A stretch of 62,723 nucleotides of DNA, filler included, from Octopus bimaculoides (GCF_001194135.2; 7 parts of 6 records of this genome joined end to end with filler, not necessarily neighbours in it); one strand, 5' to 3'. Shown: positions 19,776-20,451, numbered from the whole stretch's first letter. Program-made: numbers and translations. The notes: a model not told the origin generated them from the sequence alone.

Positions 19776-19961
19776 ATAGGAATCCCTGTACTCTGTCAAA
19801 AAAATCTAAGGTTAGATACACTGAACTAAACCAAATCAAATGAAGGCTACTAACTAAGCTTCAACATTAAAACTCTGTTTTGGGTTAGGTTATTAAATCT
19901 AGTAAAAGATTGTTAGACATTATTTACATTTGACGGATCTTTGTCATCTTGTTTGTTTGTT

Positions 19962-20007
19962 AATACAACGTTTCGGCTGATATACCCTCCAGCCTTCATC
20001 AGGTGTC
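19962..20007 (-). ncRNA. Minimal type I hammerhead ribozyme motif (PLE-type)
   Basis: 5'-GACAC CUGAUGA A GGCUG-gaggguauau-CAGCC GAAAC GUU GUAUU-3': both core boxes, 5-bp stem II, palindromic AC|GU stem III, stem I GACAC/GURUU. Confidence 0.8.
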
Positions 20008-20168
20008 TTGGGGAAATTTTGAACCTGGGTTCTCATTCCTAAGGTATTTTTCAATATTATTATTATTATTATTATGATTATTATTATTATTCAGGTCACT
20101 GTCTGGAATCAAACACAGAATCTCGGGGTTAGTAGAGCACAGGCTACTAACNNNNNNNNNNNNNNNNN

Positions 20169-20204
20169 GAAGGCTGGAGGGTATATCAGCCGAAACGTTG
20201 TGTT
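20169..20204 (+). ncRNA. Second copy of the same HHR (5' part lost in gap)
   Basis: GA AGGCTG GAGGGTATAT CAGCC GAAAC GTT GTGTT; stem I 3' strand intact. Confidence 0.7.
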
Positions 20205-20451
20205 AACAAACAAGATGAGGACAAATATCCATCAAATGTAAATAATGTAAATAATATAAAAGAAACTATTTCATGTTAATTGAAACCAACGATTTCATGT
20301 GAAAAAAAAAAAAAAAAAAGAAGTAATGATTACAGTCTGTAGACCACGTGACTCGAAGTGACCAATAGAATTCATGTAACACCACCAACTGAGTTTCTCG
20401 CAAAACATTTATCGAAGCTGAGCCGTCATAGCGGGAGTTATAATTATTTAG

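What the first reader, a model, noticed from the sequence alone, without database searches (positions are those of the whole stretch)
19917..20255. tRNA-headed SINE-like element carrying a hammerhead ribozyme, inserted as a fold-back pair
Seen: the minus strand reads tRNA-like anticodon/T-arm (CTACTAA...AGATTCTGTGTTTGATTCCAG, B-box-like), then (AAT)n, ~50 nt, a complete minimal HHR (GACAC CUGAUGA A GGCUG/CAGCC GAAAC GUU GURUU) and an A-rich tail. At 20128-20151 the sequence folds back (GTTAGTAG..CTACTAAC) and an inverted copy follows. Known: minimal type I HHRs with an extra base after CUGANGA and a palindromic stem III are typical of Penelope-like elements, which often leave inverted 5' duplications; HHR-bearing short retroposons are known in schistosomes and other animals. 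Inference: a Pol III-driven, self-cleaving SINE mobilised by PLE machinery rather than by a LINE. I am not aware of one described in cephalopods.
Basis: partly seen in the sequence, partly recalled or inferred. Interest (0 to 1): 0.88.

Follow-up and report, generated by a model that had tools for sequence, protein, structure and literature searches.

The report
Inverted pair of hammerhead-bearing retroposon copies
Two diverged, head-to-head copies of a ~235-bp octopus repeat carry a genuine Penelope-type minimal hammerhead ribozyme behind a SINE-like head, but the "tRNA-driven SINE" reading is unproven and the locus looks like an old, dead insertion.

Summary
The hammerhead is real. Arm A (minus strand, 20007-19962) has every feature that defines the minimal hammerheads of Penelope-like elements (PLEs). 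My descriptor finds it once in the piece and never in 2000 shuffles. The same ribozyme type lies downstream of an RT + GIY-YIG ORF in unrelated metagenome contigs, and helix I covaries there.

The inverted pair is also real. The arms are 91% identical over 81 nt, so this is not an assembly mirror image. Its centre is unresolved: arm B restarts after the 17-N gap inside CUGAUGA, 130 nt short of a full arm.

The tRNA head is weak. ARAGORN and Rfam find no tRNA, no A box is visible, and the B-box match is at chance level. The head does resemble the head of a neighbouring SINE-like repeat (3/500 shuffles).

One outside trace was found. The mis-annotated last exon of an Octopus bimaculoides "NUP42" model reads straight from the CUGAUGA box through (AAT)n and the head into the same hairpin. 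It may be the same locus.

Copy number, Pol III transcription, PLE mobilisation and cleavage could not be tested.

Best reading: a decayed, PLE-type head-to-head insertion of a composite non-autonomous retroposon. At best it is a new member of a known kind.

The parts
19917..20151 (-). Arm A: the most complete copy of the element (positions E1-E235). It runs head, (AAT)n, spacer, hammerhead, tail.
   Evidence: Read directly. It is the only full match to itself in the piece.
20128..20151 (-). Perfect 8-bp hairpin GTTAGTAG / CCTGTGCT loop / CTACTAAC at the inner (5') end of arm A, abutting the gap. It is either a natural hairpin of the SINE-like head or the centre of the fold-back.
   Evidence: The same head plus loop (GVSSLCS) is read in P0001. 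E1-E40 aligns to the head of the repeat at 18236-18392.
20105..20115 (-). B-box-like 11-mer TGTTTGATTCC. The P0001 copy implies TGTTCGATTCC with the CpG intact.
   Evidence: 2 mismatches, at chance frequency. Back-translation of P0001 residues NRTRN is an inference.
20055..20091 (-). Internal (AAT)n microsatellite, 12.3 units with one ATC/ATG interruption.
   Evidence: It appears as poly-Ile in P0001.
20008..20054 (-). 47-nt spacer between the microsatellite and the ribozyme.
   Evidence: It is conserved in P0001 (GVLGKFRTWVLIPKVFF).
19962..20007 (-). Minimal type I hammerhead of arm A:
- helix I 5' strand GACAC (20007-20003);
- CUGAUGA (20002-19996);
- unpaired A (19995);
- helix II GGCUGG/UCAGCC (19994-19989 / 19980-19975) with an 8-nt loop;
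- GAAAC (19974-19970);
- GUU (19969-19967);
- helix I 3' strand GUAUU (19966-19962).
The predicted cleavage site is after U17, between 19967 and 19966. There is a C2.3.A1.3 mismatch in helix I.
   Evidence: The defining features come from PMC4209133.
19917..19961 (-). A-rich 3' tail of arm A. It ends in about 2 copies of AATGTAAAT.
20152..20168 (.). Assembly gap of 17 N. It hides either about 130 nt of arm B (E25-E154) or the junction with a 5'-truncated arm B.
   Evidence: Coordinates of the blastn match: E155 corresponds to 20169.
20169..20260 (+). Arm B: an inverted copy from E155 onward. It comprises:
- ..GA|A|GGCUGG-loop-UCAGCC (20169-20191);
- GAAAC (20192-20196);
- GUU (20197-20199);
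- GUGUU (20200-20204), with G at position 1.3 restoring the helix I pair;
- the tail, ending in 2.9 copies of AATGTAAAT (20235-20260).

Best explanation
The locus is an old, inactive insertion of a composite non-autonomous retroposon, which I call E.

E is about 235 nt as seen here. It has two parts:
- a 5' head related to the heads of other octopus SINE-like repeats, ending in an (AAT)n run;
- a 3' module of about 140 nt carrying a Penelope-type minimal hammerhead and a short tandem-repeat tail.

E was reverse-transcribed and integrated head to head, with the 3' ends outward, as PLE-type integrations often are. There are two possible routes. Both target strands may have primed a cDNA. Alternatively, the first cDNA snapped back at the 8-bp hairpin of the head and copied itself. 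Either route removed whatever promoter lay 5' of the hairpin.

In an active family the hammerhead would work as PLE min-HHRs are thought to work. It has no helix III of its own, so two copies pair through the palindrome ACGU and cleave after GAAACGUU. This would trim the transcript before reverse transcription.

At this locus each strand carries only one sense ribozyme, and arm A has a helix I mismatch. The locus is therefore most likely inert, apart from being able to form a long hairpin RNA if transcribed.

Shown: the ribozyme motif, its kinship with PLE-linked ribozymes, the two diverged inverted arms, and the linkage of head, microsatellite and ribozyme in arm A and in P0001.

Inferred: mobility as one unit, PLE dependence, the snap-back or two-sided priming mechanism, dimeric cleavage, and decay.
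For: 1. Arm A meets all defining min-HHR features. The descriptor gives 1 hit in the piece and 0 in 2000 shuffles. The features are taken from PMC4209133.
2. A pattern holding only the core and helix II found 6 metagenome loci, which are 3 distinct sequences. Helix I, which was not in the pattern, still pairs through different bases: GACAC/GUGUU here, GCC/GGC and UCCC/GGGA there. In L002 the ribozyme is on the same strand about 1.5 kb downstream of an ORF with RVT_1 and GIY-YIG domains. In L003 it lies 255 nt downstream of a GIY-YIG-like ORF.
3. The arms are 91% identical with indels. They are therefore two real genomic copies and not a mirrored contig.
4. A head-to-head arrangement with 3' ends outward matches 'an inverted 5'-truncated copy adjacent to the element' and the noted WGS assembly problems (PMC8557442). 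It also matches 'dual min-HHRs 100-700 bp apart on opposite strands' (PMC4209133).
5. The last 49 aa of P0001 (O. bimaculoides 'NUP42') are the reverse-strand translation of an uninterrupted arm: CUGAUGA box, spacer, (ATT)n, B-box region, hairpin stem and loop. Cuttlefish NUP42 shows that this C-terminus is not NUP42.
6. The head aligns to the head of the SINE-like repeat at 18236-18392 (score 28 against 17.2 +/- 2.9; 3/500 shuffles).
7. PLEs and very many SINE families are present in Octopus genomes, some recently active (PMC13282606).
Against: - Copy number is unknown. The six-frame protein route gave a single trace. A control with another repeat from the piece gave none, so this route cannot count copies.
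- P0001 has exactly the architecture of our minus strand: inverted arm, then the loop in the same orientation. It may therefore be the same or the orthologous locus and not an independent copy. No NUP42 exon lies in the piece either way.
- No tRNA structure, no A box, and a B box at chance level.
- No target-site duplication: the best shared 7-mer occurs in 15% of shuffles.
- No PLE ORF in the piece.
- The variable 9-nt tandem repeat at the 3' ends is more usual for LINE-dependent SINE tails.
- The internal (AAT)n could instead be the tail of a separate SINE that served as the target.
- The element's RNA folds no better than shuffles (z = 0.13).
Confidence: 0.5

Rival explanations
1. Chance nesting followed by a local inverted duplication. 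A 5'-truncated PLE 3' end (the pLTR piece with its hammerhead) landed in the (AAT)n tail of an unrelated SINE-like repeat. The composite stretch was later duplicated in inverted orientation by a DNA-level event, such as template switching at the hairpin. There is no head-plus-ribozyme family.
For: - PLEs show an insertion bias for microsatellites, and most genomic min-HHRs are single motifs from truncated PLEs (PMC8557442; PMC4209133).
- The (AAT)n sits exactly between the SINE-like head and the ribozyme module.
- The outer ends of both arms are AAT-rich (AATGTAAAT repeats), as if the microsatellite continued.
- The one outside trace, P0001, can be read as the same locus.
Against: - It needs two separate rare events.
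- The arms end outward at the same point, a short tandem repeat of different copy number, as expected of cDNA 3' ends.
- If the window comes from the same O. bimaculoides assembly that produced P0001, then P0001 cannot be this locus, because its arm has no gap. The composite would then exist at two loci.
Confidence: 0.27
2. A LINE-dependent SINE with a passenger ribozyme. E is a real SINE, but it is mobilised by a stringent-type LINE (of the CR1, L2 or RTE kind) through its 3' tandem-repeat tail. The PLE-type hammerhead is a captured fragment with no role in mobilisation.
For: - The arms end in 2 versus 2.9 copies of a 9-nt unit, a feature of CR1/L2-type tails (my knowledge).
- CR1, RTE and other LINEs are abundant and active in Octopus (PMC13282606).
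Against: - Head-to-head dimers with both 3' ends present are described for PLEs (PMC8557442). They are not the usual product of LINE twin priming, which leaves one 3' end (my knowledge).
- No LINE tail was available for comparison.
Confidence: 0.1
3. Assembly artefact. The fold-back or the adjacency of the two arms was created by the assembler or scaffolder. Only one copy exists here.
For: - A gap lies exactly at the centre.
- The left contig stops 8 nt past the hairpin loop.
- PLE-type inverted structures are known to break short-read assemblies (PMC8557442).
Against: - The arms differ by substitutions and two indels (91% identity), so they are not one sequence mirrored.
- P0001 shows an uninterrupted arm running into the same hairpin in an independent annotation.
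Confidence: 0.06
4. A host-functional element. The inverted repeat or the ribozyme has been co-opted, for example as an intronic dsRNA hairpin feeding RNA editing or small-RNA pathways, or as a cis-cleaving ribozyme in a host transcript.
For: - The arms could form a hairpin RNA of about 80 to 235 bp.
- In O. bimaculoides a copy lies inside or next to the NUP42 transcription unit, on its sense strand.
Against: - The arms have drifted apart, CpGs have decayed, and helix I is mismatched in arm A.
- There is no sign of constraint, and the region is packed with other repeats.
Confidence: 0.03

Closest known systems
Minimal hammerhead ribozymes (min-HHRs) of metazoan Penelope-like elements (Cervera & de la Pena 2014, PMC4209133)
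   Same: - The CUGAUGA and GAAA boxes.
- An unpaired base between positions 9 and 10.1.
- A G10.1-C11.1 pair.
- A 6-bp helix II and a short helix I.
- No helix III, but a palindromic C15.2-G16.2 (ACGU).
- Occurrence as two motifs on opposite strands a few hundred bp apart.
Relatives with the same core and helix II lie downstream of RT + GIY-YIG ORFs.
   Different: Here the sequence 5' of the ribozyme is not a PLE ORF or a recognisable pLTR. It is a microsatellite and a SINE-like head. No PLE from the same genome could be compared.
Sm-alpha / Sj-alpha SINE-like elements of schistosomes (Ferbeyre 1998; Laha 2000; summarised in PMC2770079 and PMC6765202)
   Same: A short non-autonomous retroposon that joins a tRNA-related head to a hammerhead ribozyme.
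   Different: - Sm-alpha heads are recognised as tRNA-Gln by tRNAscan-SE, and there are more than 10,000 copies, often in tandem (PMC2770079).
- Their hammerhead is the canonical type I, detected with the Rfam motif (PMC2770079).
- Here no tRNA detector fires, the ribozyme is the minimal PLE type that Rfam misses, the copies are inverted and not tandem, and the copy number is unknown.
Animal non-LTR retrozymes (Cervera & de la Pena 2020, PMC7229834; Li et al. 2026 preprint 10.64898/2026.07.22.740005)
   Same: Small non-autonomous, hammerhead-bearing elements thought to depend on PLEs.
   Different: Retrozymes are direct tandem repeats of 170-400 bp with canonical type I hammerheads, and they give circular RNAs. 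Here there is no direct repeat of the unit, the motif is minimal, and the two copies are inverted. Double self-cleavage of one transcript is therefore impossible.
PLE insertion architecture with an inverted 5'-truncated copy (Craig et al. 2021, PMC8557442)
   Same: Head-to-head copies with 3' ends outward, association with a microsatellite, and breakage of a short-read assembly at the structure.
   Different: No ORF, no pLTR tandem and no 30-40-bp extension were identified. The unit is SINE-sized.

Membership tests
PLE-type minimal hammerhead (min-HHR) | Catalytic boxes CUGANGA and GAAA in the type I order | tested here: met
   CUGAUGA at 20002-19996 and GAAA(C) at 19974-19970 in arm A. GAAAC at 20192-20196 in arm B.
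PLE-type minimal hammerhead (min-HHR) | [quoted passage not shown] | tested here: met
   A at 19995 (arm A) and at 20171 (arm B).
PLE-type minimal hammerhead (min-HHR) | G10.1-C11.1 closing pair and a helix II longer than the canonical 4 bp | tested here: met
   GGCUGG/UCAGCC: 5 Watson-Crick pairs plus one G.U, with an 8-nt loop. Identical in both arms.
PLE-type minimal hammerhead (min-HHR) | No helix III hairpin, positions 15.2-16.2 palindromic, U16.1 and H17 present | tested here: met
   GAA-A15.1 C15.2 G16.2 U16.1 U17, so ACGU is palindromic. The same GAAACGUU occurs in the PLE-linked relatives L001-L006.
PLE-type minimal hammerhead (min-HHR) | Short helix I (4-5 bp) pairing the bases 5' of CUGANGA with those 3' of the cleavage site | tested here: inconclusive
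   GACAC/GUAUU in arm A has 4 of 5 positions paired, with a C.A mismatch at 2.3/1.3. Arm B has GUGUU, which would pair fully, but its 5' strand is in the gap. Relatives covary (GCC/GGC, UCCC/GGGA).
PLE-type minimal hammerhead (min-HHR) | Location in the 3' region or pLTR of a PLE from the same genome | not testable with these tools
   No eukaryotic genome collection is on hand, and no PLE ORF lies in the piece. This was shown only for metagenome relatives.
PLE-type minimal hammerhead (min-HHR) | Self-cleavage as a dimer | not testable with these tools
   This needs in vitro transcription. Published min-HHRs cleave weakly even as dimers (PMC4209133).
Rfam hammerhead families (Hammerhead_1 and others) | Match to a covariance model | tested here: not met
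   No hammerhead hit at E<=10. The control shows this is uninformative: the PLE-linked min-HHR of L003 is missed too.
tRNA-derived SINE | tRNA-like cloverleaf in the 5' head | tested here: not met
   ARAGORN finds none at default, -ps or -ps80 settings. Rfam reports no tRNA at E<=10. The 5' end lies in the gap, so the head is incomplete.
tRNA-derived SINE | Internal Pol III promoter (A box and B box) | tested here: inconclusive
   The B-box-like TGTTTGATTCC has 2 mismatches, at chance frequency. P0001 implies a 1-mismatch version (inference). No A box is seen, and the region where it would lie is in the gap or lost.
tRNA-derived SINE | Many dispersed copies with different flanks | not testable with these tools
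   One outside trace (P0001), possibly the same locus. A control search with another repeat gave 0 hits. Scans of the genome, viral and metagenome collections found no copy.
tRNA-derived SINE | Target-site duplications | tested here: not met
   The best direct repeat between the flanks is 7 nt (TAAAAGA), equalled in 761 of 5000 shuffles.
tRNA-derived SINE | Head homologous to heads of other SINEs of the genome | tested here: inconclusive
   E1-E40 against the repeat at 18236-18392 scores 28 against 17.2 +/- 2.9, reached by 3 of 500 shuffles. That repeat is itself not recognised as a tRNA.
Non-LTR retrozyme | Direct tandem repeats of the unit, each with a hammerhead | tested here: not met
   There is no direct repeat of the unit in the piece. 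The only second copy is inverted.
PLE-type insertion | Head-to-head inverted copy with 3' ends outward | tested here: met
   Arms lie at 19917-20151 (-) and 20169-20260 (+), and their tails point outward. The centre is hidden by the gap.
PLE-type insertion | RT + GIY-YIG ORF | tested here: not met
   tblastn of the L002 PLE protein against the piece gives nothing below E = 0.17. This is expected for a non-autonomous element.

The most novel reading that the evidence does not exclude
Octopus genomes may hold a family of SINE-sized retroposons that fused a SINE head to the 3' module of a Penelope-like element, including its minimal hammerhead. PLE reverse transcriptase would then copy them. This would be the first PLE-dependent SINE outside flatworms. 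A hairpin in the head would repeatedly trigger snap-back, so that copies insert as fold-back dimers able to give long hairpin RNAs in a lineage known for heavy RNA editing.
Probability: 0.3. Interest if true: 0.55.

Novelty: new member of a known kind. Interest (0 to 1): 0.3.

Why it matters
If the head-plus-hammerhead unit proves to be a dispersed family, it would give PLEs a SINE partner in molluscs. Such a partnership is so far argued mainly for schistosome Sm-alpha and for retrozymes.

It would also offer a small, tractable substrate for asking what the PLE hammerhead does during retrotransposition, which is still an open question (PMC4209133, PMC8557442).

Fold-back dimers of this kind also matter in practice:
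- They break short-read assemblies.
- They can be mis-annotated as exons, as in the O. bimaculoides NUP42 model.
- They are potential sources of long dsRNA.

If it is a single nested locus, it is ordinary repeat debris.

Tried and rejected
1. Rfam on the whole piece and on 371 nt around the finding gave no hammerhead and no tRNA. I do not count this against the ribozyme, because the PLE-linked control is also missed.
2. ARAGORN at default and relaxed thresholds found nothing at 80%. At 70% it reports 16 calls in 6 kb, which is noise.
3. I ran a six-frame composite peptide search to fish for other copies among predicted proteins and got one hit. The same trick with another repeat as calibrator gave zero hits, so the method cannot estimate copy number.
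4. Exact look-ups of P0001 and of two window ORFs next to the element, meant to fetch contigs spanning the gap, found nothing on record.
5. DNA pattern scans:
   - The metagenome scan gave only unrelated PLE-type ribozymes.
   - The viral and prokaryote-genome collections gave none.
6. To test whether P0001 is this locus, I ran tblastn of octopus and cuttlefish NUP42 against the piece. No exon was found, which is inconclusive.
7. I first read 'ERF' in P0001 as part of the ribozyme (GAAACGUU). I rejected this because cuttlefish NUP42 has ...NFQDY at the same place. The element-derived exon therefore most likely starts at the AG of CCCTCCAG|CCTTCATCAGG.
8. The TSD search gave nothing above chance.
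9. Global RNA stability of the element is no better than shuffles. Thermodynamic dimer folding does not by itself recover the hammerhead fold.
10. The 11-nt repeat AGGCTACTAAC at 19844-19854 is probably debris of a related SINE head and not part of the structure.

Full report
WHAT IS THERE

The piece (17583-23760) is AT-rich, non-coding and packed with short interspersed repeats.

Arm A lies on the minus strand. From 20151 down to 19917 it reads:
- a perfect 8-bp hairpin, GTTAGTAG-CCTGTGCT-CTACTAAC;
- 33 nt containing a B-box-like TGTTTGATTCC;
- an (AAT)n run (TRF 20055-20091);
- a 47-nt spacer;
- the motif GACAC|CUGAUGA|A|GGCUGG-AGGGUAUA-UCAGCC|GAAAC|GUU|GUAUU (20007-19962);
- a 45-nt A-rich tail.

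Arm B lies on the plus strand. After a 17-N gap, 20169-20248 repeats the last 81 nt of arm A in inverted orientation. The repeat finder reports 45 nt at 98% plus 37 nt at 86%, and blastn reports 91% overall. Both arms end in a short tandem repeat of AATGTAAAT, with about 2 copies in A and 2.9 in B.

THE GAP (tested first, as asked)

The two sides are not continuous. The left contig ends 8 nt past the hairpin loop. The right contig restarts inside the CUGAUGA box at element position 155. There are two readings:
- Arm B is full length, in which case about 130 nt are hidden.
- The gap really is about 17 nt, in which case arm B is a 5'-truncated inverted copy and the hairpin belongs to arm A alone.

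Both are normal outcomes for PLE-type insertions, which are known to break short-read assemblies (PMC8557442). The arms differ by several substitutions and two indels. A mirrored-contig artefact is therefore unlikely, although the adjacency itself rests on the scaffolder.

THE HAMMERHEAD IS REAL AND OF THE PENELOPE TYPE

Cervera & de la Pena (PMC4209133) define metazoan PLE min-HHRs by these features:
- the two catalytic boxes;
- an extra base between positions 9 and 10.1;
- the G10.1-C11.1 pair;
- a long helix II and a short helix I;
- palindromic 15.2-16.2 in place of helix III.

Arm A has all of them. A descriptor encoding these features hits once in the piece and never in 2000 dinucleotide shuffles.

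I then scanned metagenomes with only the core and helix II as the pattern. This found six loci, which are three distinct sequences. Helix I was not in the pattern, yet it still pairs through different bases: GACAC/GUGUU here, GCC/GGC and UCCC/GGGA there.

In L002 the ribozyme lies on the same strand downstream of an ORF with RVT_1 and GIY-YIG domains. In L003 it lies 255 nt after a GIY-YIG-like ORF.

Rfam finds no hammerhead here, but it also misses the L003 control. That negative therefore says nothing.

Arm A has a C.A mismatch in helix I. Arm B has the pairing G at that position, but its 5' half is unseen.

THE tRNA HEAD IS WEAK

- ARAGORN finds no tRNA-like structure, even at 80% of its thresholds.
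- Rfam reports no tRNA.
- The B-box match is at chance frequency (8 found against 6.98 expected).
- No A box is visible.

What does hold is that the first 40 nt align to the head of another SINE-like repeat in the piece, at 18236-18392 on the minus strand. The score is 28 against 17.2 +/- 2.9, reached by 3 of 500 shuffles. A similar GTTAGTAGCCT motif recurs in old debris at 19777-19860. The head is thus probably SINE-head-derived. "tRNA-headed, Pol III-driven" is not shown, and at this locus any promoter 5' of the hairpin is missing or hidden.

ONE OUTSIDE TRACE

A composite of all six reading frames of arm A found a single protein, P0001. This is UniRef A0A0L8FR24, annotated as "NUP42" of Octopus bimaculoides.

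Its last 49 residues are PSSGVLGKFRTWVLIPKVFFDAIIIIIIIIIQVTAWNRTRNLGVSSLCS. They translate the reverse strand of an uninterrupted arm, in this order:
- the CUGAUGA box;
- the spacer;
- (ATT)n;
- the B-box region, with CpGs intact where arm A has TpG/CpA;
- the hairpin stem;
- the loop.

Cuttlefish NUP42 continues differently after ...FQDY, so this is a mis-annotated exon.

The loop in P0001 has the orientation seen on our minus strand after an inverted arm. P0001 therefore has the same fold-back architecture. This admits two readings:
- It is the same or the orthologous locus. In that case it fills our gap and shows that arm B is full length.
- It is an independent insertion that folded back at the same natural hairpin. 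In that case it is evidence for a mobile family.

I could not decide between these. No NUP42 exon lies in the piece, and the protein is not in the contig index.

MECHANISM (inference)

The simplest account has four steps:
1. An RNA carrying a SINE-type head, an (AAT)n linker and a PLE-type 3' module was reverse-transcribed.
2. Either cDNA synthesis started from both nicked target strands, or the cDNA snapped back at the 8-bp hairpin. Either route gives two head-to-head arms with 3' ends outward.
3. This is the pattern described for PLEs (PMC8557442) and for dual min-HHRs on opposite strands (PMC4209133).
4. In an active family, two ribozymes would pair through ACGU and cleave after GAAACGUU.

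This locus has only one sense ribozyme per strand. It also shows CpG decay and about 9% difference between the arms, indels included, which is of the order of the SINE/LINE expansion dated to about 18-25 My in O. vulgaris (PMC13282606; the estimate here is very rough, from 81 nt). It is most likely inert.

RIVALS

- Nesting plus duplication. A truncated PLE end may have nested in the (AAT)n tail of an unrelated SINE and then been duplicated in inverted orientation. PLEs do target microsatellites. This is the main rival.
- A LINE-dependent SINE. This is suggested by the variable 9-nt 3' tandem repeat.
- An assembly artefact.
- Host co-option.

KNOWN CONTEXT

- Hammerheads and PLEs are already annotated in cephalopods: 235 Hammerhead_1 hits in the giant squid (PMC6962438) and 30 active Penelope families in O. 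vulgaris.
- Min-HHRs are massive in metazoan genomes (PMC4209133).
- A tRNA-like SINE with a hammerhead exists in schistosomes (PMC2770079, PMC6765202).
- I found no paper describing a hammerhead-bearing SINE in cephalopods.

VERDICT

The ribozyme and the inverted pair stand. The SINE, Pol III and PLE-mobilisation story is a reasonable but untested hypothesis. Even if true, it would be a new member of a known kind. A single BLAST against an octopus genome would settle most of it.

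Noticed in passing
P0001 (UniRef A0A0L8FR24_OCTBM), residues 146-194: The O. bimaculoides 'Nucleoporin NUP42' model ends in 49 residues translated from the reverse strand of this repeat, including a poly-Ile from (ATT)n. Cuttlefish NUP42 continues ...FQDYVLKVQQMHND. The database protein is a mis-annotation with a repeat-derived terminal exon.
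   Followed up: yes
window 18236-18392 (-): A SINE-like repeat whose head (GGTAAGTAGCTTGCTTATCAACCACGTAGTTCCGGGTTCAGTCC) resembles the head of the element under study. Rfam does not call it a tRNA either.
   Followed up: partly
window 18853-19020 (+), 22342-22441 (+), 22459-22673 (+): Three copies of another SINE-like family (84-93% identical blocks). The last two form a partial-plus-full tandem.
   Followed up: no
window 21981-22099 and 23108-23267 (+): Two copies of a further repeat family (TTTCCATGCTNGC...GGTTGGACG ... GTGGATGCTTT). The second is preceded by a (CAT/CAA)-rich stretch.
   Followed up: no
window 20440-20621 (-): Another repeat next to arm B. ARAGORN at 80% thresholds calls a pseudo-tRNA-Val at 20541-20621 (-).
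   Followed up: no
window 20262-20321 (+): About 50 nt beyond arm B there is an imperfect ~19-nt duplication (AAACTATTTCATGT / AAACCAACGATTTCATGT) followed by a run of 20 A. It may be the tail of a very short retro-insertion. It is unrelated to arm A's flank.
   Followed up: no
window 19777-19860 (-): ATGAAGGCTACTAAC (plus strand, 19838-19854) repeats 11 nt of the sequence just left of the gap. The stretch around it aligns weakly to the element's head (11/500 shuffles) and to the body of the 18236-18392 repeat. It is probably decayed SINE debris.
   Followed up: partly
window 21135-21740: A long (GA)n microsatellite is interrupted by a 445-N assembly gap, and a second (ATT)n lies at 21856-21884. 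Microsatellites and gaps coincide twice in this piece.
   Followed up: no
L001-L006 (metagenome contigs Ga0181466, Ga0115856, Ga0126337, OMLO01000704.1): Animal Penelope-like elements sit in contigs filed as metagenome. Two PLE families there share a ribozyme identical in core and helix II with the octopus one but differ in loop 2 and helix I. In one family, similarity between copies ends about 14 nt after the predicted cleavage site.
   Followed up: partly
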